64,000 nucleotides of DNA, from assembly GCF_033153115.1 (NCBI RefSeq), contig NW_026889772.1, positions 1,984,001 through 2,048,000 of the forward strand, in the 5' to 3' direction. Source of the stretch: Saccostrea echinata. Taxonomy: Eukaryota. Below are positions 8,201-61,700 of the stretch, piece by piece. Position 1 is the stretch's first letter. Every line of letters begins with the position of its first letter. A model generated the notes under the pieces. That model made no database searches. It was not told the origin of the DNA and saw nothing but the letters and a program-made list of their open reading frames with translations. The position numbers and the translations under genes are program-made.

Positions 8201-11200
8201 GACAAGGTATGGTAACGGCAGAATCTGGCCCCTTATCTGATGTAAAAATCAGAAGACAAAACTTTGATAGTTTGTAGTTAACACCTTAAAATGATGCTTG
8301 TTTTAAAACCAGCGATAATTTTGATTCAAAGCTACATAGAGGCCACAAGAGGGTGCAGAAGTAGGACATTTTCCTGAATTTCCTCAATTCTGGTGGAATT
8401 TAGTCAAAATTGAGATACTTTTCACTTTGGGAAACATAGAGCAAAAGCCTGCCTATCTGAGATTTTTATACACAAGATGCATCTGATACTAGTGTATGAA
8501 ACATATAAAATTGGTAGATAGGCAAGCTTGTGCTTTATGTTTTCTGAAACAAATGTGCTGTAAAATCGATGAAAAATTGCATAAAAATGAGAAAATTCAG
8601 AAATTGACATAATTTCTGACCTTTCCATGACCTTTGTGTACCCCATAACTTAGAACCAATACTCATTTTGTGGCAGGGGTGACAACAGGTTTTTATTGAT
8701 AAACTGTTGCATCATTCTAAAAGACACCCCAAACCAGGGGTCAAAAAGGGGTCTTAGCCTATCTTATCCTTTATCTATTTGCCAACATCCTTAGATAAAT
8801 AGGGAAAAGGCAATTAAAGCACAATTATATATGAAACTTCAAATTTCGAAAACTTGATGATGAATGTTGAAGAAAACTTACAGATAGAGACTGGGACTTC
8901 CTGCTCTGATTTAGAACATTGGTTCCTGTCTTCACTTTACTCTTGGCATGCTTAGTGATGTCTTCTGCTTCATACCCATAGTATCCCCGCTCTCTCCTAC
9001 AAAATATCAATATAACCATAGTAACCCCGCTCTCTCCTACAAAATATCAATATAACCATAGTAACCCCACTCTCTCCTACAAAATATCAATATAACCATA
9101 GTAACCCCACTCTCTCCTACAAAATATCAATATAACCATAGTAACCCCGCTCTCTCCTACAAAATATCAATATAACCATAGTAACCCCGCTCTCTCCTAC
9201 AAAATATCAATATAACCATAGTAACCCCACTCTCTCCTACAAAATATCAATATAACCATAGTAACCCCGCTCTCTCCTACAAAATATCAATATAACCATA
9301 GTAACCCCGCTCTCTCCTACAAAATATCAATACAGTGGACCTTAAGATATCCGGTCGATTTTTAATGGGAACGAAATTTTTTAACGTTATTTTGTCTTGT
9401 TTAACCGGAATTCCGCGTTCTGTATCCGGACGGTCCTTTTTCACCACAAAATGAATTTTTACATTATATATTGGTTCATTTATCCGGACGATAATTTTTT
9501 AACTGGTCTGTCAAGTCTGCTCAGATTTCTTGATCTGGGTGTTAATTGTTGTAAAAACACTGGTCTGGTTGTTTGTTTTTAAAGATGATCACCTGCGACC
9601 TGTTATCAATGGCTTGCGCCAAGGTTAATTGTAGGTCGATAGGTACGCACGAGACTCTCGCTTCTCTAACATGGTTTTGATACGTTTTAATTAAGGAAAA
9701 TAATTTTATAAGTGTAGAATAATTTTTTTCGTAATTGGCAAATATATTTCTTTTACTGTTAGAATACAGTCGTAACATGGTTTTATGTATTTATAAACAT
9801 GATATCGGAGTTTTTTTATGCACAGTATTTTGTGCGCGAAACACATTCTATGATTTGATGACATTTAAAAATCACTTTCAAAATTACATTCGTTAATATG
9901 ATCTCGCTTTGGATGATTACGATTAGTGTTTGTATACATATGCAGATTATGTCACATTTAGCATTGATGGGCGTTCATATTAAATAAAACTCTACCGACA
10001 TTACCATACCGACATGGCTACTATAGGAGAAGTTGATTCATTAGACACTGGGAAGTAGAAATAATTAATGTGACCATATAAACACGTTTTTTTCCAATGA
10101 CACATGTACTTTTTATTTATTTAAACAAGTATTGAGTAGTACTAACTTATATTAAAGTATTTAAACAATAAAACATATTGATAAAAAGCAACATTCTTCA
10201 CTATTGAAATGGTATGAAAGGCAATATAACTAAAATCAAGGCAATTCAGGTATCCGGACGCTTCACATATCCGGACATATTGACTGGGAACCAAAGAGAC
10301 CGGATAAATGAGGCTCCACTGTATAACCATAGTAACCCTGCTCTCTCCTACAAAATATCAATATAACCATAGTAACCCCACTCTCTCCTACAAAATATCA
10401 ATATAACAATAGTAACCCCACTCTCTCCTACAAAATATCAATATAACCATAGTAACCCCGCTCTCTCCTACAAAATATCAATATAACCATAGTAACCCCA
10501 CTCTCTCCTACAAAATATCAATATAACCCTAGTCATCCCGCTCTCTCCTACAAAATATCAATATAACCATAGTAACCCCGCTCTCTCCTACAAAATATCA
10601 ATATAACCATAGTAACCCCGCTCTCTCCTACAAAATATCAATATAACCATAGTAACCCCACTCTCTCCTACAAAATATCAATATAACCATAGTCATCCCG
10701 CTCTCTCCTACAAAATATCAATATAACCATAGTAACCCCACTCTCTCCTACAAAATATCAATATAACCATAGTAACCCCACTCTCTCCTACAAAATATCA
10801 ATATAACCATAGTAACCCCGCTCTCTCCTACAAAATATCAATATAACCATAGTAACCCCGCTCTCTCCTACAAAATATCAACATAACCATAGTAACCCCG
10901 CTCTCTCCTACAAAATATCAATATAACCATAGTAACCCCGCTCTCTCCTACAAAATATCAATATAACCATAGTCATCCCGCTCCCTCCTACAAAATATCA
11001 ATATAACCATAGTAACCCCGCTCTCTCCTACAAAATATCAATATAACAATAGCAACCCTGCTCTCTCCTACAAAATATCAATATAACCATAGTCATCCCG
11101 CTCTCTCCTACAAAATATCAATATAACCATAGTAACCCCGCTCTCTCCTACAAAATATCAATATAACCATAGTAACCCCACTCTCTCCTACAAAATATCA

Positions 11201-14200
11201 ATATAACCATAACCATAGTAACCCCGCTCTCTCCTACAAAATATCAATATAACCATAGTAACCCCACTCTCTCCTACAAAATATCAATATAACCATAGTC
11301 ATCCCGCTCTATCCTACAAAATATCAATATAACCATAGTAACCCCACTCTCTCCTACAAAATATCAATATAACCATAGTAACCCCACTCTCTCCTACAAA
11401 ATATCAATATAACCATAGTCATCCCGCTCTCTCCTACAAAATATCAATATAACCATAGTAACCCCACTCTCTCCTACAAAATATCAATATAACCATAGTC
11501 ATCCCGCTCTCTCCTACAAAATATCAATATAACCATAGTAACCCCACTCTCTCCTACAAAATACTAGGATATCCTTAATTAATAACCCCACACCCTACTA
11601 CAAATTATTAACATATAATCTTACATATAAACATATATCAACATATAACCTAACCCTAATACCTGAGTAACCCAAATAACCCTGACATCTCTTATTTAAA
11701 TATAATCATTATAGTCCAGACCTCTCTTACAATAAAAAATTATTCTTCAAAAAAAGTAAAACGTCAAAACTGTAATAACCCTGCTCTCACCCACAAAACA
11801 GATAAAATGTCAAAACTGTAATAACCCTGCTCTCACCCACAAAACAGATAAAATGTCAAAACTGTAATAACCCTGCTCTCACCCACAAAACAGATAAAAT
11901 GTCAAAACTGTAATAACCCTGCTCTCACCCACAAAACAGATAAAATGTCAAAACTGTAATAACCCTGATCTCACCCACAAAACAGATAAAATGTCAAAAC
12001 TGTAATTACCCTGATCTCACCCACAAAACAGATAAAATGTCAAAACTGTAATAACCCTGCTCTCACCCACAAAACAGATAAAATGTCAAAACTGAAATAA
12101 CCCTGATCTCACCCCAAAAAGAGGTAAAATGTCAAAACTGTAATGACCCTGCTCTCACCCACAAAACAGATAAAGTGTCAAAACTGTAATAACCCTGCTC
12201 TCACCCACAAAAGAGGTAAATGTCGAAACTGTAATAACCCTGCTCTAACCCACAAAAGAGGTAAAATGTCAAAACTGTAATAACCCTGCTCTTACCAACA
12301 AAACAGGTAAAATGTCAAAACTGTAATAACCCTGCTCTCACCCACAAAAGAGACAAAATGTCAAAACTGTAATGACCCTGCTCTTACCAACAAAACAGGT
12401 AAAATGTCAAAACTGTAATGACCCTGCTCTTACCAACAAAACAGGTAAAATGTCAAAACTGTAATAACCCTGCTCTCACCCACAAAAGAGGTAAAATGTC
12501 AAAACTGTAATAACCCTGCTCTAACCCACAAAAGAGGTAAAATGTCAAAACTGTCATAACCCTGCTCTCACCCACAAAAGAGGTAAAATGTCAAAACTGT
12601 CATGACCCTGCTCTCACCAACAAAACAGATAAAATGTCAAAACTGTAATAACCCTGCTCTCACCAACAATTAAGGTAAATTGTCAAAATTGTAATAACCC
12701 TGCTCTAACCAACAAAACAGATAAAATGTCAAAACTGTAATACCCCTGCTCCCACCCACAAAACAGATAAAATGTCAAAACTGTAATAACCCTGCTGTAA
12801 CCAACAAAACAGATAAAATGTCAAAACTGTAATAACCCTGATCTCACCCAAAAAAGTAAAATGTCAATACTGTAATGACCCTGATCTCACCCAAAAAAAA
12901 AGTAAATTGTCATTATGTAGCTTACTGGTACACTAACTTCTACACAGGCATATTCTTACCTGTACATGTACTTTCTTATTATAGATTTTAAAACAAGGCT
13001 ATATACATTGTAGATTACCTCTTTTTAACACTGTCAACATAATCATCATTTTCCAGAACATTATTCCTCCACGTGTCTTTAGGGTGGGGGTCAGACCCTC
13101 TCCAGGGTGTGATTTTCTGTTTGTCTTTACTGGTCCTCACTGACTTAGCCCGCTTTTTCTCCGTCTCCAGCTGCAGGTTTTCAAGCATCAGCGTTGTGTC
13201 CTATAAAAAAAATCATCAACATTATATAACTCGTAAAAATGTTAAAAAATAATTTATCTTTTTTATATAAATGTTAGTTTGATATTTCAGTGCACAGTGT
13301 ATTTTATTTACATAACTGGGTATACCAGATGACAAAGTTTTTTTTTAATTTGTCCTTACTCAGTAATGATTGGAGAAATAGATGTCCTTGATTTATCTTG
13401 ACCCTGCATTTATGACTCTACAGTCAGCATGTACTTGATATCTTACTATCTTGAGTCTAACTCACTGGCCTCGGATCACTTTTATCTGACTTACAAAAAA
13501 TATGGGGTGTAATAAAAGATAGATGTATGAAACGCTTTACATATGTTAACCACTTTTGCCAATGAAATACTAAAAGTTTACTTTCTTTTCAAATCTATTC
13601 ACATATAAACAATCTACTTTACTACCAAAGTTCATTCAAAAATTCCTAATACTTCCCAAGATATGGTGAAATCAATTCCAAAATTGACCCGTTTTTTTTT
13701 TACTTGAAATAAGCATGGGCCCCTGGTCATTCACATGTAAACAGACAGTGTTTGAACTGCAGCAAACAGTTGCATTGTATTTGCACAATCTATCAACAAT
13801 TTAAAGTTGATTTTTTTACTCTAGGCCTGTGGTCTAACTTAATGGGAGAACTTGATACTTTCACATTGAGCCTAAGTACATTAATGTCCTTGATGATTCC
13901 TTGAGTCTAGATACATCAATGCACATGATATTTTCTTACCTTGGGCCTATCTATATGAATGTATTTGATATTTTCCCAACCTACATTTGATTCATAGATA
14001 TACCTGACTCATTCTTACACAGGGTCTAGGTACATAGATATACTTGAGAGGTACTTGCTATTTTTTTAACCCTGGGTCTAGGTACATAGATTTACTTGAG
14101 AGGTACTTGCTATTTTTTTTACCCTGGGTCTAGGTACATTAAGTACTTGCTATTTTTTTTACCCTGGGTCTAGGTAAATTAAGTACTTGCTATTTTTTTT

Positions 14201-40100: not shown

Positions 40101-43100
40101 TTGAATTTTATGAATATTTTTTGGCAGTGTAGTAGTATCACATCCATTTAAGAGAATGCTCTATAATGATGAAGTATTAATTAATTGTTTAATTGCTCTA
40201 TAGGTGATAAAGATATTGTGAAATCAGAGATCAGCCTTGTACATGAAGTAGCTCTGAAGAGGAACATGACTGTTAGTTTTGATGTAAGTGATTCAGCCAT
40301 TGAACAGAGTTGTAAAAATTCTCTGTAGGGTTCTGTATAGTAAACATTACAAGTAAAGGATTTACAGGAATGTGTGGCAGGTTTTAACGTGGTACCAAAG
40401 AATTTCAAAAGGTTAGAGAATAAAATTTCAAGTGGAAGACACATTCATGTTTTCATTTTTCAAAAAATAACAGAATCGAGAAACATTTTCCTGTCAATAA
40501 AAAATTTGAGTCCAGATGAGGGTCCCAGTCAAATAAATATGTTCTTTTTAAGTTTATCAGTGAGTTGTATCCCCTCAAATTTATACTTTCTTCTTGAGGT
40601 TTACAATGAGTTGGGCCCCCTTCATATCACTGTATTTTCTATTTTAGGTTATCCGTGAGTCAGGTCCCCCTCATATGAAGACGTTTGTGACCCGCTGTAA
40701 GGTGGGGGACATGGAGACAGAAGCCGAGGGGAACAGTAAGAAGGTGTCCAAAAAGAAGGCGGCAGATCTGATACTGGAGAAACTGAAGGAGCTCCCACCC
40801 CTCCCTCCATCAGTGATCCGCCCCCGAGCCAAGATCAACAAGAAAAAGAACAAAAACATCATCAAAGTTAGTCCAGTCATAAAAAACCTTTATGGTTTAC
40901 TGCTTATATCTCTGTATTTTCATATGTTACTTAAATGTATAATAGATGTCTGGTGCTAAATGTATAATTGGTGTCTGGTGCTAAAAGAATTGTATTGATC
41001 CATACATGATCATGTTGTGTGTGGAACAACCTTACTTGCATCAGACACAGAGTCATTAGACAAAAAAAATGTCCACTGAAAACAGGCATGTTGAACAAAA
41101 CTGAATTAAAAACACTGGCCATGGGCCCCATTAGACAGTTGGATGATTAAAAGAGTTAAAATACAGTGAAAAAATGATCGGATAGAATTCAAACTAGTGC
41201 CTCAGAGGGAGTGGCTACTGGTTTCAGGTGGCCATAATGGCGGATGTGACTGTATCTTACTAATGATAAACAATCTGTCAGACTTGTTTTCACTTCCTAC
41301 AATATTAAAACTTCAGTTTAATGCATTTAATATGCTCAAGTGAACTAATGTATAAGTGAAAAATTTACATTAAAATTTACTGATTACAAGTATGTTGGAA
41401 CAGCAAAAGATAAAAAAAATTGTAAAAGTTTGAAATGGATGAAGAATGTACAATTTAAACTGGTTAATGAAGTATTTATGTCTTTGTTTTAAAGCAACAA
41501 ATGCAGAAGGCAGATCCTAATTACGGAGTGGGGATCAACCCAATCAGTCGTCTAATTCAGATTCAGCAAGCACAGCAGAAAAAGGAACCAGTTTACACAT
41601 TACTAACGGAAAGGGGACTTCCTAGAAGACGAGAGTTTGTCATCCAGGTAAAACATGAGTAATGGCTGAAGTGAAATCTATGTGTCATTGATTTACTGTC
41701 ATGCAGGTACACAATTAATGTAAAAAAAACAACACACAATTGATTTAAAAAATTGGGAAATAAAATTTGTGAAGTTGGAAGCAAGGAAACACTTGTACTT
41801 AAATTAGATGGTTAGATTCAGTATTTTGTGAGGTATAGAATGATTGTTTTCGTACCCATTGCTAAATAGATTGAGAGGATCTTGTTTACAGTAACAGTAC
41901 ATGTATGTAGTAAAAACAATGTCCATTAGTTTACTGTTTGGGAATATAAGAAGCTCAAGTATACTTTGCATAAGGATTGCTCAAGACCAGAGGGTACTTA
42001 AACCCTGAACCAAGGTCATTTGGAATATGTCATTTTTACAGAGTAATGAAGTGTAAAGGTCATTTAATTTGTAAAGAAGGAAATTAGAAACCCATACTTG
42101 GCTTAAAAGTTATTATGACTATAATCTGTGTGTTGACCCTGAACCAGTCAGTTGGTCATTTATCAAGGTCAATGTTACTTGTTTCCATGGTGTCATGGGC
42201 ATAACTCTATAATACAGGCATGGTAAAACAGTTTTGTTGCTCTTAATGAGGATGTGTCATGACCGAAGCAAAGGTCATTAGAACCATGTCACAGGATTTC
42301 TTGTCCAAGTCATAGCAGTGTTATTCAGAGTTTGCACAAGCTAGACTCAGAGGTTTTTATTGGATCAAAGGATATACCATGATTGTATATTAAATACACT
42401 TACAGAAGTTCAAGACTTCATATAGTGGAAGTGGAGCAAGGGCCACTTAGGGCCTTTATTAGCCCTGTGAATTTCTGAAAAATTGGAACTGCTTACTTTT
42501 GGTTGACAATGCAGTATTATCACTTGGACCCTTGGTGACCACGTATCTATTGAACATGACGTAATTTTCTCTCTAGTCAATGCATTATGACGTCATGAAA
42601 TGCATCATTTTTCCCATATCCTGTAAATTTAAAAAATAGCCAAAAGTTGAAGTATTTTTTTCAATATTTTATATAGAGCACAACCTCTTATCAATTAGAT
42701 AATGAAAGATCTGTTTCTGAAGATCATAAAACATGTTAAAGTTTTTGGATTGAGGGCTTTGCTCATATTTTAATTCTTTGCTGAAGGTACTCAAATAGGC
42801 CTGTTTTCGGGTACGTCTTTTTACCACAAGGAACCACAAGGTACCACAAGGAACCACAAGGATACCACAAGGAACCCCTAGGTCACCATATACAACCTTA
42901 ATTATTCTAAATATGGTTTATATAAAACCAACACAAATGACATTTACAAATTTATTCAAATTGCCTTTTGGTAACTACTCAGCTATTATAAAATTGCAAC
43001 AAACTATAATGAAAAATTACACACGCAAACAATGTATTTACAGTACTCTAGATATTTACACTAATTATCAGGCAACGTGCCTGATACAACCAGGCATTGT

Positions 43101-46100
43101 TAATGAGTAAATGCAATGTGTATTAGGCCGATGGCCGAATATGGTAGCTGATGGCTTGTATGTGTGGTGGGCTGCAGGCCCCCATGTATGTGAGGCCGAT
43201 GGCCTAGTGACAGTGTGAGGCCGATGGCCATGAGTGAGTTAGGCCGATGGCCTTGCATGCATGTAAATGGCCGATGGCCTTGAGACAGTGAAATGAATGC
43301 AGCCGATGGCCTGTGTGCGTGTGTAAAAGTGGATCTAACATGGATTTACAATAAACAAAATTTCTTTTGGGGTTAAATAACACACTTGACCAAGTGTGAA
43401 ATGCCCAAATGAAGTTATTATAATGTCAATATAATAGCTGAGAGCCCCAAAAGGAATTATCAAACACCACCACTCTTGATCTGATATCAAAAATTATAAA
43501 ATCCAATGAACATAGATACAAAGCAAATTCATCTTCTTGAATTCCAACTTAACCCGTATTATGAACATGAGATAAAATAAAATGTAAAGTTACATTCACT
43601 TATAAAACTACATATGTACATAACTGTTCATTGTTTAACAATCCGCTCCAAATTTGTGAAAACAAACCAAATACACAACATGATGTGAACATAAAATGTT
43701 AAATTGCATGCTTAACTGATCTATTACATTTACATACACAACTGCCTTAAACATACAGCTAGTCTTTTTTACACAGTTTTTTGACAACACATTGCCTTTT
43801 GTGCACGTGACAAAGTTTGATCATCGGAACGAATGTACCTGGTGTAACAGTCTGAGCTCCATCTACCCAAGGTTTTGATCAAGTGGTCTTCTACTTGGCC
43901 ACCGGCAGCAGAGGTAGCAGCTCCTATTCTGAAAGAGTGGCCATTGAAATTCTCGTCATCCAAACCCAGCAATTTGAGTATCTGCTTTAGTTTGGTAATG
44001 AAAAAGTGACTTGATAATGGATTTCCACTTTCATCCGTAAATAAGGCTGAAGACATGACACAGTTGTACCACTTTCTTCGAAGGTTTAAATATTTTAACA
44101 TGGATTTCACTGGACACACGGTTTGGTCTGACTGAAATAAATGGATCTGAATTCCTGTACGAAAAGGGTCTGTTTTAGATCGTTTAAGCGTGATAGTATA
44201 AGCTTTGTAGTTTCGATCCATGACGACATCTTCCACACACAATAGGTTGTCTTGATTTATATCGTTCACAGTGAATTCCCCGCATCGAAGGAATGCGAAA
44301 AATGCTAGAGAACAAGCAGCTTGCAGCATGGTATCTAGGAAATAACCGAACATACCCCGCTGTAAGACATTTTGAATTTGGATCAAAACACTGTATGTAA
44401 TGGGCCTCCTTTTCTGTTTAGAACTTTGTTGTTTTTGAATTCCCCTCAACACTGTTTGCAACCTTGCACACGATTCATCTGATGATAGAGGATTAGAAAT
44501 ACCAGCCTTCACATAATGGAATCTCACAGCTGCAAGATACAATTTGATGGTATTGTACGTTAGTTTTAGGGAATTGCAGCAATGTGTAACAAAGTAAATA
44601 AGGGTTTGTTCTGAGATCTTTGGTGGATTATAATTAGGCGCTTCTATTCCAATCGATGAAAGGAACTGGCAATATACTGTAAATCCTGTCCTGTATGCCC
44701 TCCTTGTATTGTCGCTGATTGAAGATTCGCATAAGTCCCTAGACTCTTTCTCTAATACAGGATTAATTCTTTCAAGGATGGTACTGGTACTGGCATTGCT
44801 GCTGCTGCTGGAGCTACTTCTCTGAATTTTGTCATCTGGAAACGAGAAAGAGAGTCAGCAATAATGTTTATCTTTCCTGGAACATGATCACATAATACAA
44901 GGAAATTATTATTAGCTGATATCCAAGTTAGTTTTCTTAGTAGCTTCATAATCATAGAGGATTTTGATCTGCGTTTTTTAATTATCTGAACAGTGGCCAG
45001 ATTATCACACCAAAATTTAATTCTCTTTCCTGACCATTTATGCCCCCATATCACAGCGGCAACAACTATGGGATACAATTCTAACAATGCCATAGATAAT
45101 GTGTCATCGCCGAGGTCTTGAATTTCTGGAGGCCATTTTCCTTGGAACCATTCTCCGTAATAGTAACCCCCGTAACCAATGGTAGAAGAAGCATCTGTAT
45201 ACAAGGATATGTCTGAGGCACAAGTCACATTTTCCTCCAGAAAGAACGAATGTCCATTCCACTGCTTTAGAAATGTTTCCCACATAGCCAAGTCCATTCT
45301 GCATTCTTTAGTTAAATTTACGTGATGATGTAATTTAGTAACTGAATGGGCCAGAGTTAAAAGATATGAAATAAATGATCTGCCTGCTGGAATAATTCGT
45401 GCTGCGAAATTGAAATGCCCTAATATGCTGAGTAGTTCTCTTTTTGTGCAGGAACGTTTTGACTTTAAATTGCCAATGAGAAAAAATATGCGCTCTATTT
45501 TTTTCTGGTGGGATTCGTGCTTCCATTTTAACAGAGTCCAACATAATTCCCAAGTATTCCATTTCTGTACAAGGTCCTTTTGTTTTCTTCTCCGAAATGG
45601 GAATTCCTAAATTGCCAAACACCATTGTTAGTATTGCCATACTTCTGAATCCTTCTTCCTCTGTAGGATCCAATGTCAAGAAATCATCTAACAAATGTAA
45701 CACCTGCTTGATTTTGTAATTATTGGTTAAAATCCAGCAGACAGCCTGTGAAAGCATATCAAATATTTTGGGGCTACTTCTGCACCCAAACACTAAGCGT
45801 TTATAAAAGTAATATTTGTTTCTCCATTTTATACCATAAAAAGGTTGCACTGTTTTTGACAAAGGTAATACCTTGAATGCGTCAACAATGTCAGTCTTGC
45901 ACATCAATGAATTAACACCTAATGATTTCAAAATACTTATGGCATCATCAATACGCACATACTGTAACGAGTAATCTTCCTTATCGATGAGGCTATTGAT
46001 GCTAACTTCGGATGCCGAGTCATGAGGGGATGAGAGGTCTACTATCAATCTGTATTTCTTTGAGTATTTTCCTTCGGCAACACCAATAGGGCTAATACGA

Positions 46101-49100
46101 TAGACTTCAAATGGTGGTTCGTCATATGATCCATCTACATAACCTTTGTCAATTTCATACTTGAGTAAAGTGTCTACTACTTCAGGTTTCTTCCTAGCTG
46201 TACTTAAATTTTTGCATTCAAATGAAGTCAATGGCAGCTTAGAAATTCCTGTATCAAATCCATTCTCCAATCCATTAATGAAAGTATCTACAAAGTCTTT
46301 GTCTGGATGATGGTGTAATTCTGACTTAAATGCTTCGATGTTGATCGTAGTTAAAATTTCTTGTTTTTCGGAATCTGACTGTAAGGTAAAATCAGGTAGT
46401 CATTGCTTCTCACTTTGGTTGCCCTCCTTTTGTTTCGTGGTTGTTTTACATTGCGTGGAAGTATGTTTTCCCATCTTACAAGTTGAACATATATGTACCA
46501 AGTTACACGATGGTCTGTTGCATCCTGTCTCGCTGTTAAAATTGTTACAGATTTCTCTGCCCCTATGCGTGATTCTGGGCCTTCCTTGCACATCCAGTTG
46601 GTTTTGTTGTCCTCTGTTCCTGTTTTGTCCTGGAAGTGAACTATTTGAAACTGCACTGAATTTTGCTCTTGGGCAGAAATGTGAAGTGTGTGTAGTACTG
46701 TTGCAATTCTCACATCTTATTACCGTCTGGCCAGCAAAAATAGTGGTAAACAGTTTCGTGTCCCTAATTGACCAGTCAACTCTGATATTTCTTTGATGAA
46801 GAAGGGCACTGGCTCTCGCTGAAAAGGCCTTGTGATATTCATAAAATGCAGAACCACGTGTCATGGACGCCATCTCCACGATATCACGTTCATATGCATC
46901 CAATTCTATCCTTCTTTCCGGATATATTTCACTTTTGAATTTTGAGAATGCCAGTATAAACTCGCTTATGGTTAAGTTTCTTTGTAATCTGGCATCAGTA
47001 TTTTGTTTCAGTAAGATATAACGGCCTTCCGTATCTTGAATTTTGTGTTCCTCATTTTCACGAGGCAGAAGTAAAGCGGCAAGATTGACATCCTTACCTT
47101 GTATAATGTTGTTCCTGAGGTTTGTGGACACAGTCTCGACATACGGGACCGAATCCGATGGAACACGAGAGCCCGATGGTAAATTAACACGGTCCGGTTC
47201 CGATGTCGGTGTACTCTGGTTAGGATTTTGCTGTTGTAACTTGCTGACAACATTTGTAAGTGACAGAAGAGATTGTTGTATTGTATCAATTGCTTGGCTC
47301 AGCGAGTCTATTTTGGTTTCATTTGTTGACTTCCGCCCAGCCTCGTTATGAATTGCTCTCTCCGAAGATGCCGGAAGTTCATGAACTTCATCGCCATTTT
47401 GATTCTCACTAATGTCAATTGTTCTTTCGTCTGACAGAGAACTGCTAAGCTCTTACGACTGTTTTGTACATTGTCTTTATAAATTTGAAGTAATTGAGAT
47501 TTCTTTAAAGTAGACGGCACTACTATATTTGAGTCTTTCAGTTTTTGTATTAAGTCTGATGACGACCAATTTTCGGGTATATTAGTGTCCCATCTAGATG
47601 TGCTTTGATTTTCACTGCGAGTACGCACATTCCTACCTGGAATCTCACTTGTCTTTCTTTTCCTTCCCGTCATTTTTATTTTCTATAATCACAATAATAA
47701 GAGCCTCGGGCTAAAGTTCAAGTCATTCGGCCATAACATGTAAACATTGAAACGAAACAAACACACGTGTATCCTGGATCGGTAGTCACATACTGTATAT
47801 GCATTTACCACTTGTAAATAGTCCACATATTATGAATACGCTACAAAAATCCAAGTTGGCTAGGAGACGAAAATATTCCAAAGGAATCTAGAGAAAATCT
47901 TTGAGATGTAACTCTACAGTTGCAGGAACTAGACAAGATGCTAAGAATCTGATTGGCTTATAGAATCACGTGATAACAAGCATGTTGAAATATGATACAA
48001 TCTACAAGATTTTATATAAACAATATTTAATAAATTAAATAACATTTTATAAGCACTTGTAAACTACAAAAAAAAGTTTTGAAAGGCAAATTAACACTTT
48101 AATTGTCTTAAATAGGTACAGTATAGCGCTATTAACCAAGGTAAAAATCTAAATTAAATTCACTAATTTCAGCTAAATTATGCATGCATAGTTCAGAGGC
48201 AGAGATTGTATTTTTATGATGTATAAAAAGTTAATGGTTTATTGTGTATTTCAATACACAAACCATAAGTAAATACCCAAGAAGAACCCTAATGTCATGT
48301 CCCCTGTACAATGTCATGTCCCCTGTACCACTAGGATAGGCCAAGGTACCTACAAAATGACACTTAAATGCCACTTAATTCAACTTTTAAAAAATCTAAT
48401 CATAGTTTAAATGCATTTGTTTACAAGTGCATATAAACCATATTTAGAATAATTAAGGATGTAAATGGTGTCCCTGGGGTACCTTGTGGTATCCCTGGGG
48501 TTCCTTGTGGTTCCTTGTGGTATCCTTGTGGTTCCTTGTGGTACCTAGTGGTTCCTTGTGGTAAAAAGACGCACCCCCTGTTTTCTGCAAAACTCGAGAA
48601 CATTGCATTTTCACATAGTCTGTTTTCCAATATCTGGATTCTCAAAAAGAAATTTTGTTATAGGAAATGAAAACACTAAATCTCTACTTTATTTTGATAT
48701 ATGAAATGGGACACAGGTTGATAGTCAATTAATTGATATAAGGACAGGGCCATATTCTGCATGAAGTGAACCTAGCTCTTTACAGAGTTTTTGTGTCAAA
48801 TAAATACAAGCTCTGTTAGGAAAATTTTAGATAATTCTGCTCTGTAGGTACAAGTTGATGAGCAGACCTGTACAGGAGTGGGTCCCAATAAGAAGCTGGC
48901 CAAACGACATGCTGCTGAAGCCATGTTGACTCTGCTTGGATACAACAAACCTTCCCCACAGCCAGCAAAACCCGCCATAAAATCTGCCAACAACCAGGAG
49001 GTAATAATAACTGACCGGAGTAATAACTGACCGGAGTAATAACTGACCAGAGTAATAACTGACCGGAGTAATTACTGATCAGAGTAGTAACTGACCAAAG

Positions 49101-52100
49101 TGATAACTGACCGGAGTAATAACTGACCAGAGTAATAACTGACCAGAGTAATAACTGACCAGAGAAATAACTGACCGGAGTAATAACTGACCAGAGTAAT
49201 AACAGATTAATAACTGGCCAGAATAATAACTGACCGGATTGATAACTGACCAGAGTAATAACTGACCAGAGGAATAACTGACCAAGGTAATAACTGACAG
49301 CGCCCCAGAAACATGAAACAGCTTAGGCCTAGTTCAAAATCTGTATATTGCTCTGAAATACAGAAAAATGTGGTAAAAGGGAACTTGTTTACAAATATCT
49401 GTTGTAAGGAAATTTTTATGAATTCTGTAGAAGACTTTTACTATGTTTTCTATATGGATATAAAGTATCTCGGGAAGCAGAATACAAAGTCCCAGTTACT
49501 CCCTTATAACTAAGTTTTACTGTAGTATAGAGGTCAAATGGTCAAAAATATAAATGTTTTGAAGATGGTATACTGGGGTGTTTTATCTGCAGATTTTGAG
49601 TTTCAGCATCCAATTAATAAGCATTTAACAGATGACTGACATTTTGATTTAAGTCCAAGTCTGTTTCATGACCCAGGACAAGATCTGTATTTTAATCTTG
49701 AGTTTATTGGACCTAGCTGGTATGTAAATCCAGGAAGTGTGGTTATCCATTTACTGTTTAAAGGAGAATTACATGAATATTATTTTTGAAAAAATACATC
49801 CCAGTAGATTGTCATGATCATTCTTCTCTCTGTTCCAGGAGACGGGAATTAAAAAAGTGACATTTCAAGAGATGTCCGAGGATGGTGGTAAGTTTCTAAT
49901 TATTTATAGCTGCTGTGTGCATCTTTCTTACATTCCACTTTCTTGGTAATTAGTCTACAACTAAGTGAGAATATCTGTCAAGTCAAAGAGAAGCTGAATT
50001 GCAACTAGTGAATTTTGTTGTTTTTTTAATTAAATTTTGATATCTGTAACCAGAGATTTGTGGAATTTTATAATAAATTATGACCTTCATGATAAGAAAT
50101 GGAAAAGAAAGAATGGAAACAAAAACCTAATGGAAAAAAAAAAGATGAGTGTGTGAAACACTGATGCCCCATATGGGTACAGCCCACTAATTGTTTTCCC
50201 ATAGGTGGCAATGTTAACGTTTCTTCACATAGCAATGTCCCTAATTTTCGTTCAGCAGTGAGTGACCCCTCAAATCAAAGCACATCAAGTTGTCTTTCCT
50301 TGGTTAAAATCTCAAGGTGGCATGTCAGATTCGTGTTCCGGCAAAATGCATCTGTCTGCGTTAACCTCTGAAAATGAAAGTGAAAGTAGGGGAATTCAAG
50401 ACTTCTCACTGGTGTTATAATACATAAAATAATTCTGCTGATCTTCTTGATAAATTACACCTGCCAAGCTTTTTTGCAAGGGAACATACTCCTTATCAAC
50501 AAGTATGAGGCTCAGTTTAATACATTATCACAGTTTTTTTATTCAGGTCTGCAAATTAAGGAACTTGTAATTTTTTCTGCACTACTTTCTTCCCCTACTG
50601 ATTCTAAAAATAATTAGAGGTATGTACCCATATGGCAGCCCATGGACAAGATGAAAGTTTTATAATGTAGATCCAAGCTCAAGGTCAAGAGGTCAAAAAT
50701 GTTGGTACCCAAAGAGAGGTCTTGTCACAAGGAATAAACATATACTGTATAGGGGATTAATTTCACGGGTTGTAATTTTCACGGTTTTTTCTCCTCTGAC
50801 ACGATTGCGGTTTGTTGAATTCGCGGAATCGGTATATAATAAAAGTTACCTCCCTTGTCTATATCTGTTTAATCCAGAATGACATTAATCAGCGTTAAGT
50901 ATTCACTCCAAAAACAACAGGGTAGGTTTATATGAAATAGTTAGATTTAATAATTAATTGACGACTAATTAAAACAAGTGTAGTAAATAAAAGTCCTTGA
51001 CTATAAACGTCGAATGACTTTCTTATATACTATTACGATGAGCACATGTACACCCCAAGATCTTCTTTCTGAAGGGATAATACATCGCAGCGAAAAAACA
51101 CTAGGCGGTAAGAAATGTGTTAATGTAGATCGAAGAAATAATATCCTTTCACATCTTCAGCAAGTTCAATAGTTATTTGATTGATTTTTTAAAAACAAAA
51201 TGTCGATAAAAACTAATACGCATGATAATGCAGGTAACAAATACACGGAGTCACATAGTTATGCAATGGTAATCAAAATCCATGACCCACGTGTTATGAT
51301 TGATGTAGCGTGGGCTATTAAAACAGCTTTTAAACAAATACGGGTTTATTATCTAGCTGCTCTAAATTAAAGTAAAGCGTGATAATTAAAATAATTGTGC
51401 GACTCATAATTACTGTAATGACCATGTAATACACGTATATATACCTATCGTAGTCTATTCTCAAATTTCCAAAATAAAACATGGAGGTTATTGAAAACTT
51501 ATTCACTGTTTCTTGAATTCACGGATTTATTAACACCGTGAATATAGCGAATATTAACACCGCGAGTTATTTTCCCCCTATACAGTATATGAATATGAAA
51601 GTCGTAATACCAACCATTCAAAATTATCACTAACGCCATATCAATTTGCAATATAGTTTGTCAGATTCACCGCTTCTATTTGTAACAAATCCAAATTATG
51701 ACATTATCAAAAAAATATATCCACCCGCGCATCCAAAAATATCCGAGTACATTTTTGTTTTCAACTTTTTAAACCAAAGGCACAAAAGACTTTGGAACAC
51801 GTGGTTGAGGAATGACAGAAGCGTGGGATTGAGAAAGTTTGTACTTCGTAAATCATGCTATGTAACAATGTGTGAAGTTTTTCACGATGCCTGACTACTC
51901 TTTATATGTACGATACGTCAATAGTTAAAAACAGTGGATGTGAATTTTTTCCTTATACTGCAATCGAACTAGAAGCCGAGGAAACTTTTGAAGCGCTGTT
52001 CGATGTTACACGAAAGGTTTGGTGAATATTGATGATGTTTGCTCTATCAAAAAAACAAAAAAAAAATCTAAGAGTGATGTAATTGAGATTTCAAGACCAG

Positions 52101-55100
52101 ACATGTCCCTGGGAATTTGCACAGAACTGAACAGAACGTTTGTAGAAATGAAACTAAATTGCAATGTAACACTTACTTCATTCAAAACATGACAAACAGA
52201 AAGTAGACACGTTTTCACGTTTTATGAATGCTTCCAAAAATTTTTCTCTCCCTGGAAAAAATTACAGGCAAACAAGACCAAAGAATTTATTTAATGATTT
52301 GATAGAATGGGCAACAAATTGGAGAGGAAATTCTTCAAATAGACCTAAGCAAAACACTACTTGTTACGAAGATAAAGGCTTTGAAAGTTGAAACTTTATA
52401 TGCCCCCCCATGAATATGGCCGGGGCATATAGTGTTTGTCATGTCCGTCTTCCGTCCTTCCGTCCTTCCGTCTGTCCTTCCGTCACACTTTGCTTTTAGC
52501 TCTGTTCAAAGCTCAGTTTCAAAGAAACTATCCAAGATATTTTTATCAAACTTCATATGCTGATAGATATTGATGAGGGCTATGCAACTGCATCAACATT
52601 TTTTGACCTTGACCTTTCCTTTGACCTTGACCTCACTTTTCTTAAATTAGTGTTTAGCTCAGTTTTAAAGATACCATTCAAGATAGTGTAATCAAACTTC
52701 ATATGTTGATACATACTGATGTAAGCTATTCAATTGCATCAACATTTTTTTGACCTTGACCTTTATTTTGACCTTGACTGCACTTTTCTTAAATTAATGT
52801 TTAGCTCTGTTTTAATGAAACCATTCAAAATATTTTTAACAAACTTAATATGCTGATACATACTGATGAGAGCTATTCAACTGCATCAATATTTTTTACC
52901 TTGACCTTTCCTTTGACCTTGACCTCACTTTTCTTAAATAAGTTTTTAGCTCAGTTTTAAAGATACCATTCAAGATAGTGTTATCAAACTTCATATGCTG
53001 ATACATACTGATGAGAGGTATTCAACTGCATCAATATTTTTTGACCTTGACCTTTCCTTTGACCTTGACCTCACTTTTCTTAAATTAGTGTTTAGCTCAG
53101 TTTTAAAGAAACCATTCATAATATTTTCATCAAACTTCATATGCTAATACATACTGATGTAACCTTTTCAACTGCATCAACATTTTTTGACCTTGACCTT
53201 TCCTTTGACCTTGACCTCACTTTTCTTAAATTAGTGTCAAACTTCGTATGCTGATACATACTGATGAGAGCTATTCAACTGCATCAATATTTTTTGACCT
53301 TGACCTTTCCGTTGACCTTGACCTCACTTTTCTTAAATTAGTGTTTAGCTCAGTTTTAAAGAAACCATTCATAATATTTTCATCAAACTTCAAATGCTAA
53401 TACATACTGATGTAACCTTTTCAACTGCATCAACGTTTTTTGACCTTGACCTTTCCTTTGATCTTGACCTCACTTTTCTTAAATTAGTGTCAAACTTCAT
53501 ATGCTGATACATACTGATGAGAGCTATTCAACTGCATCAGTATTTTTTGACCTTGACCTTTCCTTTGACCTTGACCTCACTTTTCTTAAATTAGTGTTTA
53601 GCTCAGTTTTAAAGAAACCATTCATAATATTTTCATCAAACTTCATATGCTAATACATACTGATGTAACCTTTTCAACTACATCAACATTTTTTGATCTT
53701 GACCTTTCCTTTGATCTTGACCTCACTTTTCTTAAATTAGTTTCTGAATCAAACGTCATATGCTGATACATACTGATGTAAGCTATTCAACTGCAGCAAT
53801 ATTTTTTGACCTTGACCTTTCCTTTGACCTTGACCTCACTTTTCTCAATTTGTGTTAAAATGTTGCATTACTAATATACCCTTGGCGGGGCATTCATGTC
53901 CTATGGACATATTTCTAGTTATTTATTGAAAACAATATCAAAAAAGTTCAAAATCGTAAATTCATGTGGTACACAAATGATATCTATAATTTTATGTTTT
54001 TTTTTAAGTGCTTGCTCTTTGAAATCATGCTTTATTCATTGAAAAAAATGATATTACTTGTATTCGCTCGCCTCAAAATTTTCAACTCCAAACTGAAAAA
54101 TATTAGTTGTAAAATTATTTCGCCCTCTCGCCTCACTTTTTATTTTTGAAAATCCAAAGAACTATTTTACAAATTGGTGTGGCCTAAGGTTAAAATTTAG
54201 TGAAAATATTTTCAGAAATAGGACAAACTCCAAAGTCAAGGTCATAAAGTAAAAAAATGTTTGGTCCAAACAAGGTCTTGTCACAAGGAATACACAGGTG
54301 AAATATGTAAGCCCTAGCACAACAGTTCAAAAGTTATGGGCAAGGATAAAGTTTTTTTCAAAAGTAAGTCAAATTCCAAGTTCAAGAGGTCAAAAATGTT
54401 GGTACCCAAAGAAAAGTCATGTCACAAAGAATGCATTTGTGACATATGGAAGCCCTAGCACCAACTATTCAAAAGTTATGGCAAAGGTTAAAGTTTGGTA
54501 AAAAAAAAAGTGAAAGTTGGTTAAACTCCAAGGTCAAGAGGTAAAGAAAATTGGTACTTAAAGAAAGGTCTTGCTGTAAGGAATACACATGTGAAATTTA
54601 AAAGCCTTAGCACCAACCATAAAAAATTGATGGACAAGGTTAAATTTTTTGTGGGCTGACAGACAGACCAATAAACTATATGCTCCCGAATCTTTGATTA
54701 TAGTGGCATAAAAACTTGATTAACATTCATTCATCTGTCAATGTGGCATGACAATATTTCAGCAACTGAGAGTGTTAGTAATGGTAAAAGTTCTGGAGGA
54801 CGTCAGCTGGTTCCCGGCCTCTTACTGCTGCCCGATTCTAAATACAACGGAACAGCCTACAGACCACCTCATGGTAAGTGTGCAGTGTACATCTACATGT
54901 ATCAGAGGCAGATTTATTTTGCCTCTGACTACTGTAGATTTAAATATTTTTACAGGGTATAATTTCAAAATGTTCTTGTTAAAAAGCTTTTGCTTGGGGT
55001 TATTTATGTGAAAGTTAAAGAATTAACAAAACTTTGCTGGTTAGTTGTTTAGCATGCTACCTTTTTTCATAACTGTTTATGTGGTGTTCAATTCTATGAA

Positions 55101-58762: not shown

Positions 58763-61700
58763 CTGCACCTGGGCATATCAGAGGCAAAAAGAGTAAAAGT
58801 TTTAATAAGGAAGGGTATTCTTACCAGATTTTTGAACATCTGGACCATTTGTTCAAGTGTTCTGGTCCTGTCCAGGGCTCTATTAATTTGTATTCTACTG
58901 AGAGGAGTTATTCCCCTTTGCCATTTACTTTTGATAATTAATCACTGTAAATAATGTACTTGAAAGGTTAATAGAATAGGAGAATTATGCAAGAATTGTT
59001 ATTGTATAATACAAAAAGTACTTTCTTAGTTTTAATGATCAGGTAGACATGTAAGTAGTAGATAAATAAAAATCAGACAAAAATAACTTGTCTTATGAAA
59101 TGTTCATCAAAGACCAAGAGAGGTCAATGTAAGAGATTTCAACAAGGTATGAAGCACTGATAGTTTGTTAATATACTTATGGTGAGAGTGATAAATGGGG
59201 AAGAGATTAGAACCTAATTTATGAACTGTTAATGAATACTAGACTAATTATTTTGTTGATCCTGATCACCCTATTTTTCTTGCTTTTGGGCAACAAAGGT
59301 TCACCTTTTAGTTCATTTTATACTCTATGGATTCTCTAAATTGTTGTATGATACTCAGATGACCGTTAAGGCCCTTGGGCCTCTTGTTCTATTTACTATC
59401 ATAATTATTAATTTATACATGATTTAATTTTACTAGTGAGAATTACACTTAAATTTTAAAAAGAATGACATTAAAACCCTGACTTTTTCAATAATAAACT
59501 ATTTTTTAAATATTAGTTTTTACCCCCCCCCCCCCCCCCCCCCCCACATTTGGGCTAGTAACTTTTTACTTTGGGCTAGTAACTTTCTTGCTGCCACTAG
59601 CCCGTGGGCTAGTGCTTAATTTTTTTAATTGCACACCCCTGTGGTCAATGGATGTGCAGTGACCTTGAACGAAGTTTCTAGGTCAAGGGTCAAAAATAGC
59701 CTCTCTGTTTAAAATCTTTGTTCGGTGCATGGTTTCTTTCTCTTAAGTCCAGTCAGCCTCAAACTTTACCAATTGACTTAGGGTACAGAACATTTCTGAT
59801 TTTCCTTCCATATTTTGATATGTATGTAACAGTTTTCAGAGAGGATATGCAACATTTGTGATTTTTGTGTGGATTTTTGATAGAGGGTATGGAGCACTCG
59901 TGATTTTCATGCCATTTTTTATTGTAACAAGGATGACATAGAAGCTCTTTAGACTCAAACAACACATCCCTTAATAGTACACAAGTGTTCCTCTTCAAAA
60001 TAAACCCTTTTCAGCTACCTTATATTTTCATGTTCGTTGCTGAAAGCGGGGCCCTTTGAGATGGCCACCATCTCAATGATATCTAGTTTTTGTCTGTAAA
60101 GGTGCTTGATATCATTATTTCTGTCTGGACAGGTATGTGATATCAATATTTCTGTCTGGACAGGTGCTTGATATCATTATTTTTGTCTGTAAAGGTGCTT
60201 GTTATCATTATTTCTGTCTGGACAAGTACGGGATATCATTATTTCTGTGTGGACAGGTGCTTGATATCATTATTTCTATGTGGACAGGTGATTGATATCA
60301 TTATTTCTGTGTGGACAGGTGATTGATATCATTATTTCTGTGTGGACAGGTGATTGATATATAATTATTTTAGTCTGGACAGGTACATGATATCATTATT
60401 TCAGTCTGGACAGGTGCTAGATATCATTATTTCAGTCTGGACAGGTGCTAGATATCATTATTTCTGTGTGGACAGGTGATTGATATAATAATTTCAGTCT
60501 GGACAGGTATGTGATATCATTATTTCAGTCTGGACAGGTTCATGATATCATTATTTCTGTATTTCTGTGTGGATAGATGATTGATATCATTATTTCAGTC
60601 TGGACAGGTAGGTGATGTCATTATTTCAGTCTGGACAGGTTCATGATATCATTATTTCTGTATTTCTGTGTGGATAGATGATTGATATCATTATTTTAGT
60701 CTGGACAGGTGCTTGATATCATTATTTAAGTCTGGACAGGTGCTTGATATCATTATTTCTGTCTGGATAGGTGCTTAAAATCATTAGTTTAGTCTGGACA
60801 GGTATGTGATATCATTATTTCTGTCTGGACAGGTGATTGATATCATTATTTCTGTCTGAACAGGTGCTTGATATCAATATTTCTGTCTGAACAGATGCTT
60901 GATATCGTTATTTTAGTCTGGACAGGTGCTTGATATCATTTTTATTGGTCTGGACAGTGATTGATGTTATTTCTGTCTGGACAGGTGCTTAATATCATTA
61001 TTTCTCTCTGTACAGGTGATTTATTTCATTATTTCTGTCTGGACAGGTGCTTGATATCAATATTTCAGTCTGGACAGGTGCTTGATATCATCGTTTTTAG
61101 TCTCGACAGGTGCTTGATATCATTATTTCTGTCTGGACAGGTGCTTGATATCAATATTTCTGTCTGCACAGGTGATTGATATCATTTATTTAAGTGTAGA
61201 CAGGTGCTAGATATCATTATTTCTGTCTGGACAGGTGATTGATATAATTATTTCTGTCTCGACAGGTGATTGATATCATTTATTTCTGTCTGGACAGGTG
61301 ATTGATATTAATATTTCTTTCTGGACAGGTGACTGATATTATTCCATCTGGACAGTTGCTTGATATCATTATTCTTGCATTGATATTCTTGGAGTACTTT
61401 GTAAAAGAAAGTCTTCAGCTGTCGGAGAGACACAGATATACAAGTTATAATATACAGGAAGTGAAAGCTGTGTGTAATATCAATGAACAATATATTGTAG
61501 AAATTTCATAAAAGTGAAAATTGATTTTAAAATTTTATAAATTTTAGGGTGCTACAAGTGAGTATCTGAGTCGAGTTTCCCTCCTCTCCAACCCTCCCCG
61601 TGTGTTTCACGGCAGTGGAATGTCGACAGAAGCGGCCCGTGATTCGGCTTCTCTGGAAGCTCTCAAATTTTTGGAAGACCTCGGCAAAGGTGACGGGTAA

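What the first reader, a model, noticed from the sequence alone, without database searches (positions are those of the whole stretch)
42800..48585. Ngaro-type RT + tyrosine-recombinase retroelement packaged between foldback/Mutator-like TIRs with a perfect 9-bp TSD
Seen: gag-RT-RNase H-YR with no methyltransferase and only two frameshifts. It is flanked by 115/146-bp inverted repeats starting GGGT(A/G)CGTCTTTTT and built from tandem accacaagga subunits of unequal copy number, with an exact cctgttttc duplication outside. No transposase or DDE integrase is encoded, and I could not find split direct repeats. Known: YR retroelements integrate without long TSDs, Ngaro/PAT carry split direct repeats and DIRS1 carry ITR+ICR, whereas 9-bp TSDs with G-starting, internally repetitive TIRs are typical of Mutator/Foldback DDE transposition. 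Inference: this is either a hybrid element in which a YR retroelement travels as cargo of a MULE-type transposase acting in trans, or a YR-retroelement lineage with undescribed termini. A simple nested insertion into a MITE is the mundane alternative.
Basis: partly seen in the sequence, partly recalled or inferred. Interest (0 to 1): 0.85.

Follow-up and report, generated by a model that had tools for sequence, protein, structure and literature searches.

The report
Ngaro retroelement nested inside a MULE
A tyrosine-recombinase (Ngaro-type) retrotransposon has landed inside a short, internally deleted Mutator-like DNA transposon, so the apparent hybrid is an ordinary nested insertion of two known kinds of mobile element.

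Summary
Inverted repeats starting GGGT(A/G)CGTCTTTTT lie at 42809 and 48576, with an exact 9-bp duplication (cctgttttc) outside them. Between them sit gag-like, RT/RNase H and tyrosine-recombinase frames on the minus strand.

The two parts are separate elements.
- **The shell is a Mutator-like family.** The genome holds 82 such termini, forming about 33 pairs. Fourteen bounded copies were inspected: 12 have an exact 9-bp duplication, one a 10-bp one and one an imperfect one, all different.
- **No other copy carries the RT/YR core.** They share only the TIRs and a 377-bp subterminal stretch with the window copy.
- **A candidate autonomous copy exists.** A 29-kb copy with the same termini holds an intact 1007-aa Mutator-family transposase frame.
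- **The core is an insertion.** It spans 42924-48052 (5129 bp) and splits the left arm. The inverted repeat resumes at 48053, and uninterrupted copies read straight across the site.
- **The core has its own family.** At least seven other copies are 97-99% identical, and none of the six checked has these TIRs within about 2 kb. One shows the Ngaro repeat layout A1-[ORFs]-B1A2B2. The window copy is a unit-length A1-ORFs-B1 form, which is why no split repeats were found here.
- **Integration looks recombinase-mediated.** The ends join the flanks at a 2-3-nt T core, as described for DIRS-order elements.

The hybrid and new-termini readings are not supported. Interest is low.

The parts
42800..42808 (.). 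Left copy of the 9-bp target-site duplication (cctgttttc) of the Mutator-like element
   Evidence: identical to 48577-48585. The other family copies have different flanking duplications.
42809..42923 (+). Left TIR arm of the non-autonomous MULE, cut short by the retroelement insertion. Holds 5.3 copies of the 10-bp unit ACCACAAGGA.
   Evidence: It matches L001, L002, L004 and L007 up to ...GGTTTATAT, then diverges.
42924..48052 (-). Unit-length (A1-ORFs-B1) copy of an Ngaro-type YR retroelement, 5129 bp, inserted into the MULE arm
   Evidence: Searches give the insertion boundaries against uninterrupted MULE copies. Searches give 7+ copies elsewhere at 97-99% identity; no TIR hit in the six loci checked (L009-L014).
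47897..48051 (-). A repeat (A1) at the 5' end of the retroelement
   Evidence: this 155-bp stretch occurs a second time, downstream of B1, in L009 and L010 (as A2).
46403..47682 (-). ORF1 (gag-like, no Pfam domain). The frame is broken by a single-base indel near 47454, and there is a 9-nt in-frame difference near 46932.
   Evidence: It is followed by an in-frame TGA at 46400-46402.
44755..46399 (-). ORF2, RT plus RNase H. The frame is broken by a single-base indel near 45504.
   Evidence: RVT_1; invariant D/E/D/D columns in the C-terminal half; fold matches RT-RNase H chains over about 530 columns.
43772..44854 (-). ORF3, tyrosine recombinase: 361-aa open frame with an N-terminal SAM-like domain and a catalytic domain carrying HSFR and a C-terminal Tyr
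   Evidence: Phage_integrase 26.5 bits, SAM-like domains; weak XerH alignment.
42924..43408 (-). B repeat (B1) in the 3' region of the retroelement. Contains the GGCCGATGGCC palindrome array at 43116-43311.
   Evidence: retro positions 1-485 occur twice in L010 (B1 and B2). family D3.
48053..48421 (+). Subterminal region 'X' of the MULE. In uninterrupted copies it follows the left TIR arm directly.
   Evidence: 97-99% identical to six other copies, in each of which it abuts the TIR. Positions 48053-48064 pair with 48419-48430.
48419..48576 (-). Right TIR arm of the MULE, with 9.4 copies of the 10-bp unit. The join of X to this arm is an internal deletion of about 5.4 kb relative to L001-type copies.
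48577..48585 (.). Right copy of the 9-bp target-site duplication

Best explanation
Two unrelated mobile elements are nested here.

The shell (42809-42923 plus 48053-48576, about 640 bp in all) is an internally deleted, non-autonomous member of a Mutator-like (MULE) family. It was inserted by a DDE transposase supplied in trans, which made the 9-bp duplication cctgttttc.

The core (42924-48052, minus strand) is a unit-length copy of an Ngaro-type tyrosine-recombinase retrotransposon. It integrated into the inner part of the MULE's left arm by recombination between the element's B|A junction (...AACATTTTATAT|AAAACC...) and a target reading GGTTTATATGC. This left only a 2-3-nt T core on both sides and no long TSD.

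Shown: the boundaries, the separate copy families and the different end structures. Inferred: the order of events (MULE first, retroelement second) and the circular-intermediate, YR-recombination route, which is taken from the published DIRS/Ngaro model.
For: (1) Uninterrupted MULE copies (L001, L002, L004, L007) read ...AAATATGGTTTATAT|GCACTTGTAAAC... straight across the point where the window holds 5129 extra bases.

(2) Inside the window, the inverted repeat resumes across the insert: 48053-48064 pairs perfectly with 48419-48430. The bases that actually follow 42923 do not pair.

(3) The genome holds 82 TIR termini, about 33 pairs 2.6-29 kb apart. Fourteen bounded copies were inspected: 12 have an exact 9-bp duplication, one a 10-bp one and one an imperfect one, all different. 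Copies L001-L008 share with the window element only the TIRs and the 377-bp X region.

(4) C27:7772985-7802152 has the same termini, a perfect 9-bp duplication, and an intact 1007-aa frame matching PF00872 Transposase_mut above its cut-off.

(5) The core has at least 7 other copies at 97-99% identity. A TIR query found no hit in the six loci checked (L009-L014), each with about 2 kb of left flank. None of their positions falls inside a TIR pair.

(6) L010 shows A1-[ORFs]-B1-A2-46 bp-B2, and L009 a truncated version of it. This is the Ngaro layout described in PMC8547959 and PMC4157794.

(7) In 12 left-end junctions, drawn from this family and a more divergent (about 81-87% identical) one, the flank ends xTTTATAT before AAAACC in 11, with x varying; one reads TTTATTT. 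The other end reads ...AACATT(T) followed by variable sequence. The internal junction has four T's. This fits crossover at a TT(T) core shared by junction and target, as proposed for DIRS elements (PMC7192593).
Against: The order of events is not demonstrated.

No other about-640-bp copy of the deleted MULE was found. The shell is therefore itself single-copy, not a common MITE.

The right junction reads TTTTATAA where TTTTATAT is expected, one substitution.

The link between the C27 transposase and this TIR family rests on one element. Its TIRs are only about 80-83% identical to other copies beyond the terminal 23 bp.
Confidence: 0.9

Rival explanations
1. Hitch-hiking composite. The retroelement entered the MULE at an earlier locus. 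The whole 5.8-kb unit was then cut and pasted to this site by the MULE transposase acting in trans, making the retroelement passive cargo in the manner of a Pack-MULE.
For: Both termini and the duplication are intact. The 5.8-kb size lies within the 2.6-29 kb range of mobilised family members. Cut-and-paste leaves no donor copy, so a single copy does not exclude one move.
Against: Only one composite exists. No other TIR pair holds the core, and no other core copy checked has the TIRs. Nothing requires this extra step.
Confidence: 0.07
2. A YR-retroelement lineage that has adopted MULE-like TIRs as its own termini, that is, undescribed ends or a true hybrid element.
For: Only the co-location seen in this one copy.
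Against: The family's own ends are defined by 7+ copies and by 12 left-end junctions, and they are unrelated to the TIRs. The family has classic split direct repeats. The TIRs with subterminal X occur in dozens of elements without any RT or YR.
Confidence: 0.01
3. DIRS1-type element whose inverted terminal repeats are the observed TIRs.
For: DIRS1-like elements do have inverted terminal repeats.
Against: The window has no internal copy of the terminal sequence, so no ICR: the terminal 11-mer occurs only at the two ends. Flanking 9-bp duplications that differ between copies are not a YR signature. The TIRs belong to a separate family. ORF2 leaves no room for a methyltransferase.
Confidence: 0.01

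Closest known systems
Ngaro retrotransposons (DIRS order; Poulter and Goodwin; described in PMC8547959 and PMC4157794)
   Same: Three frames: gag-like, RT/RNase H and YR. No methyltransferase. [quoted passage not shown] No long TSD.
   Different: The window copy is the unit-length form A1-ORFs-B1, lacking A2 and B2. Five of the seven close copies examined share this form. ORF1 and ORF2 are separated by a conserved in-frame TGA. Placement on an RT or YR tree with reference Ngaro sequences was not done.
Non-autonomous Mutator-like elements (MULEs, Pack-MULEs; PMC6431247)
   Same: 9-bp (once 10-bp) duplications that differ between copies. G-starting TIRs of more than 100 bp. Internal sequence unrelated to the transposase. 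Mobilisation in trans. One family member carries a Mutator-family transposase.
   Different: The arms are built from 10/21-bp tandem subrepeats, giving a foldback-like look. The candidate transposase has a weak N-terminal OTU-like protease match. The cargo here is a nested retrotransposon, not a captured host gene fragment.
Ngaro insertions into EMALE virophage-like elements of Cafeteria (PMC8547959)
   Same: A YR retrotransposon interrupting a TIR-bounded DNA element, which produces a composite that looks chimeric.
   Different: There about one in four EMALEs is hit, a clear preference. Here only one of about 33 MULE pairs, and one of 8 or more retroelement copies, is involved.
DIRS1-like elements and the trinucleotide integration model (PMC7192593, citing Goodwin and Poulter)
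   Same: The element ends are flanked by a short identical core, here TT(T), which is also present at the junction of the joined ends.
   Different: The ends are split direct repeats, not inverted repeats plus an ICR. There is no methyltransferase.

Membership tests
Ngaro (YR retrotransposon) | Reverse transcriptase | tested here: met
   RVT_1: E 4e-11 in the window piece and 2e-11 in L010 ORF2. PDB RT hits.
Ngaro (YR retrotransposon) | RNase H downstream of RT in the same frame | tested here: met
   AlphaFold model of L010 ORF2 (pLDDT 88) aligns over about 530 columns to RT-RNase H chains of CaMV, foamy virus and HIV. Invariant D402, E440, D465 and D515 columns. Sequence profiles alone did not reach RNase H.
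Ngaro (YR retrotransposon) | Tyrosine recombinase instead of a DDE integrase | tested here: met
   Phage_integrase scores 27.2 bits in L010 (cut-off 27.1) and 26.5 bits in the window, plus SAM-like N-domain matches. HSFR motif and C-terminal Tyr. No rve domain.
Ngaro (YR retrotransposon) | No methyltransferase domain (separates Ngaro from DIRS1 and PAT) | tested here: met
   There are only three frames. The 548-aa ORF2 is fully accounted for by the RT-RNase H fold. No further domain hit.
Ngaro (YR retrotransposon) | Split direct repeats A1-[ORFs]-B1A2B2 with the internal repeats downstream of YR | tested here: met
   Met in the family copy L010 (A 155 bp, B 485 bp, 46-bp spacer) and partly in L009. 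Not met in the window copy itself, which stops after B1.
Ngaro (YR retrotransposon) | RT/YR phylogenetic placement with reference Ngaro sequences | not tested
   No named Ngaro, DIRS or PAT reference sequences were available from the tools. The nearest named homologues are unannotated bivalve proteins.
Mutator-like element (MULE) | Target-site duplication of about 9 bp (8-11) that differs between copies | tested here: met
   Fourteen bounded copies inspected: 12 exact 9-bp, one 10-bp and one imperfect, all different in sequence.
Mutator-like element (MULE) | Terminal inverted repeats shared by the family | tested here: met
   82 termini match the 23-nt tip with at most one mismatch, none in the reversed control. 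Arms of 115-160 bp.
Mutator-like element (MULE) | Mutator-family DDE transposase encoded by an autonomous member with the same termini | tested here: inconclusive
   One element (C27, 29 kb, perfect TSD) holds an intact 1007-aa frame. It scores 28.3 bits on PF00872 (cut-off 21) and 25.9 bits on PF10551 (cut-off 27.6). It is a single copy, with the next relative at 39% identity. The functional link is not shown.
DIRS1-like | Inverted terminal repeats plus an internal complementary region that copies both tips | tested here: not met
   The terminal 11-mer occurs only at the two ends of the shell. The retroelement's own ends are direct, not inverted.
   No such copy beyond the window.

The most novel reading that the evidence does not exclude
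The retroelement entered the MULE before the MULE's last move. The 5.8-kb composite would then have been mobilised at least once by the Mutator transposase, making a YR retrotransposon a passive passenger of a DNA transposon. The evidence cannot exclude this, because cut-and-paste leaves no donor copy and no empty allele could be examined.
Probability: 0.07. Interest if true: 0.35.

Novelty: new member of a known kind. Interest (0 to 1): 0.12.

Why it matters
Mainly as a correction. An architecture that looked like a new hybrid class (a YR retroelement with Mutator ends and a 9-bp TSD) resolves into two ordinary elements, one inside the other.

The work also gives usable annotation for this genome, which is probably a bivalve judging by the named homologues.
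- Exact boundaries and repeat layout of an Ngaro-type family.
- Its T-core integration junction.
- Definition of a MULE family with subrepeat-built arms and a candidate OTU/Mutator transposase.

It is also a reminder that unit-length Ngaro copies lack split repeats, so single copies can mislead classification.

Tried and rejected
- **Empty-allele test:** The order of the two insertions stays inferred.
- **ICR search:** the terminal 11-mer with one mismatch allowed found only the two ends.
- **Coding capacity of the 5-9 kb MULE copies:** few frames reach 100 aa, and the ten longest have no significant Pfam family. They are non-autonomous.
- **Short (about 640 bp) MITE-like copies of the shell:** none among the 82 termini or the 41 X-region hits. 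'Common MITE' is therefore not the right description.
- **RNase H by sequence:** Pfam and a 28-sequence profile against PDB reached only the RT part. The fold search settled it.
- **A 7-nt homologous core (TTTATAT) as the rule for integration:** rejected. The left TTTATAT is largely element-derived, and only 3 of about 12 right junctions extend beyond the T core.
- **L012 and L013 as independent insertions:** rejected. Their left flanks are 99.1% identical over 1.9 kb.
Full report
**What is there.** Window 42800-48585 holds a 5768-bp unit bounded by inverted repeats. The left end starts at 42809 (GGGTACGTCTTTTT...) and the right end stops at 48576 (...AAAAAGACGCACCC). The exact 9-mer cctgttttc lies outside each end. 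The arms are 90-95% complementary. They consist of 10-bp ACCACAAGGA units, 5.3 copies on the left and 9.4 on the right. On the minus strand lie frames with RVT_1 (E 4e-11) and Phage_integrase (E 3e-6) matches. No transposase or DDE integrase domain was found.

**The shell is a Mutator-like family of its own.** The window belongs to a 923-Mb genome, at G000 C23. A 23-nt tip pattern finds 82 termini, 41 on each strand and none for the reversed control. They form about 33 convergent pairs 2.6-29 kb apart. I inspected 14 bounded copies: 12 have an exact 9-bp flanking duplication, one a 10-bp one and one an imperfect one, all different in sequence. That is the signature of staggered-cut DDE transposition of the Mutator type.

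Copies L001-L008 share only two things with the window element: the TIRs and a 377-bp subterminal stretch, X, at window 48053-48430. None of them has the RT/YR region. The 5-9 kb copies have no recognisable coding capacity.

One element, C27:7772985-7802152 (29,168 bp), has the same tips and subrepeats. Its duplication, gttactgaa, is present on both sides. It carries an intact 1007-aa frame that scores 28.3 bits on PF00872 Transposase_mut (cut-off 21). The same frame gives sub-threshold MULE and OTU-protease matches. It is a plausible autonomous partner. It is single-copy, though, with the next relative at 39% identity, so the link remains an inference.

**The core is an insertion into the left arm.** Uninterrupted copies read ...AAATATGGTTTATAT|GCACTTGTAAAC... 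without a break. In the window the first half ends at 42923 and the second half begins at 48053, with 5129 bp in between. The window shows the same thing by itself. If 42924-48052 is skipped, the inverted repeat continues for 12 more perfect pairs, 48053-48064 against 48419-48430. The bases that actually follow 42923 do not pair.

Without the insert the shell is about 640 bp. It corresponds to an L001-type element that has lost about 5.4 kb between X and the right arm. No second copy of that deletion derivative was found.

**The core has its own family, its own ends and split direct repeats.** Both ends of 42924-48052 occur together at seven or more other loci at 97-99% identity. A TIR query found no hit in the six loci checked (L009-L014), each with about 2 kb of left flank. 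None of their positions lies inside a TIR pair.

In L010 the layout on the coding strand is A1 (155 bp) - three frames - B1 (485 bp) - A2 - 46 bp - B2. L009 has the same layout with a truncated B2. This is the A1-[ORFs]-B1A2B2 structure that defines Ngaro elements, together with the absence of a methyltransferase (PMC8547959, PMC4157794).

The window copy stops after B1, as do L011 to L014.

In L010 the three frames are:
- ORF1: 430 aa, with no Pfam domain.
- ORF2: 548 aa, with RVT_1.
- ORF3: 361 aa, with Phage_integrase plus SAM-like N-domains.

An AlphaFold model of ORF2 (pLDDT 88) aligns over about 530 columns to RT-RNase H chains. The C-terminal half has invariant D, E, D and D columns. 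The YR frame has HSFR and a C-terminal Tyr.

The window copy is 99.0% identical to the L010 unit. Its frames are broken by single-base indels near 47454 (ORF1) and 45504 (ORF2), and there is a 9-nt in-frame difference near 46932. Named homologues of ORF2 are unannotated bivalve proteins at 53-57% identity, from Mytilus, Mercenaria, Pecten and Ylistrum. The host is therefore probably a bivalve.

**How the core got there.** I collected 12 left-end junctions, from this family and from a more divergent one about 81-87% identical. In 11 of them the flank ends xTTTATAT directly before AAAACC, and x varies; one reads TTTATTT. At the other end ...AACATT(T) is followed by variable sequence. The internal B|A junction reads AACATTTTATAT|AAAACC, with four T's. 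The simplest account is crossover at a TT(T) core present both in the joined-ends junction and in the target, which leaves the core on both sides.

This is the behaviour proposed for DIRS-order elements, where a short species-specific core at the circle junction defines integration sites (PMC7192593). In the window the target, GGTTTATATGC, happens to match the junction over seven bases. The right junction shows TTTTATAA, one substitution away from expectation. There is no long TSD around the core, so the 9-bp duplication belongs to the shell only.

**Verdict on the interpretations.** Other retroelement copies have ordinary ends without these TIRs, and TIR elements without the retroelement are common. 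The 'undescribed termini' and DIRS1-ITR readings are contradicted: there is no ICR, and the family's own ends are direct repeats.

A single hitch-hiking move of the composite cannot be excluded. The ends and the duplication are intact, and cut-and-paste leaves no donor copy. Nothing supports it either.

**Novelty.** Both elements are new family members of known kinds. The composite is an ordinary nested insertion. That agrees with MULEs being recently active here, but I did not compare it with this family.

**Handling.** Copies were only compared and described.

Noticed in passing
window 46400-46402 (minus strand); same position in L009, L010, L011: ORF1 and ORF2 of the Ngaro-type element are in the same frame, separated by one conserved TGA followed by CTA. 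ORF2 has no early Met. This suggests gag-pol expression by stop-codon readthrough.
   Followed up: partly
L010-L014 and window 42924-48052: Five of seven close copies are unit-length A1-ORFs-B1 without A2 and B2. They could arise by recombination between B1 and B2, or by integration of a resolved monomer circle. L012 and L013 are not independent, because their left flanks are 99.1% identical over 1.9 kb.
   Followed up: partly
G000 C27:7772985-7802152 (L026-L028); frame L026:4918-7938 minus: A 29-kb TIR-bounded MULE with a perfect 9-bp TSD and an intact 1007-aa frame. The frame combines a Mutator-family transposase match with a weak N-terminal OTU-like protease match. The rest of the 29 kb was not examined.
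   Followed up: partly
window 43116-43311: An array of seven GGCCGATGGCC palindromes lies inside the B repeat (3' region) of the retroelement. It differs from L010 by a 23-nt length change, so it is a variable minisatellite within the element.
   Followed up: partly
L016:6510-7418 plus and L008:4722-5630 plus: A 303-aa open frame without any Pfam match recurs inside two 8-20 kb MULE copies that are 99% identical in that region. It could be cargo or another nested element.
   Followed up: no
window 8972-12912: Long 40-bp and 46-bp satellite arrays (about 9, 31 and 25 copies) account for the strongly negative GC skew of 10-14 kb. The window as a whole is rich in tandem repeats, for example 28324-30979, 52510-53856 and 60087-61373.
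   Followed up: no
window 49005-49298: A 16-bp tandem repeat (TAATAACTGACCAGAG, about 19 copies) lies 430 bp downstream of the MULE.
   Followed up: no
G000 C49:786453-787787: A Mutator-transposase-like frame, 45% identical to the C27 protein, lies about 1.1 kb outside the right end of another TIR pair (C49:778364-785381).
   Followed up: no
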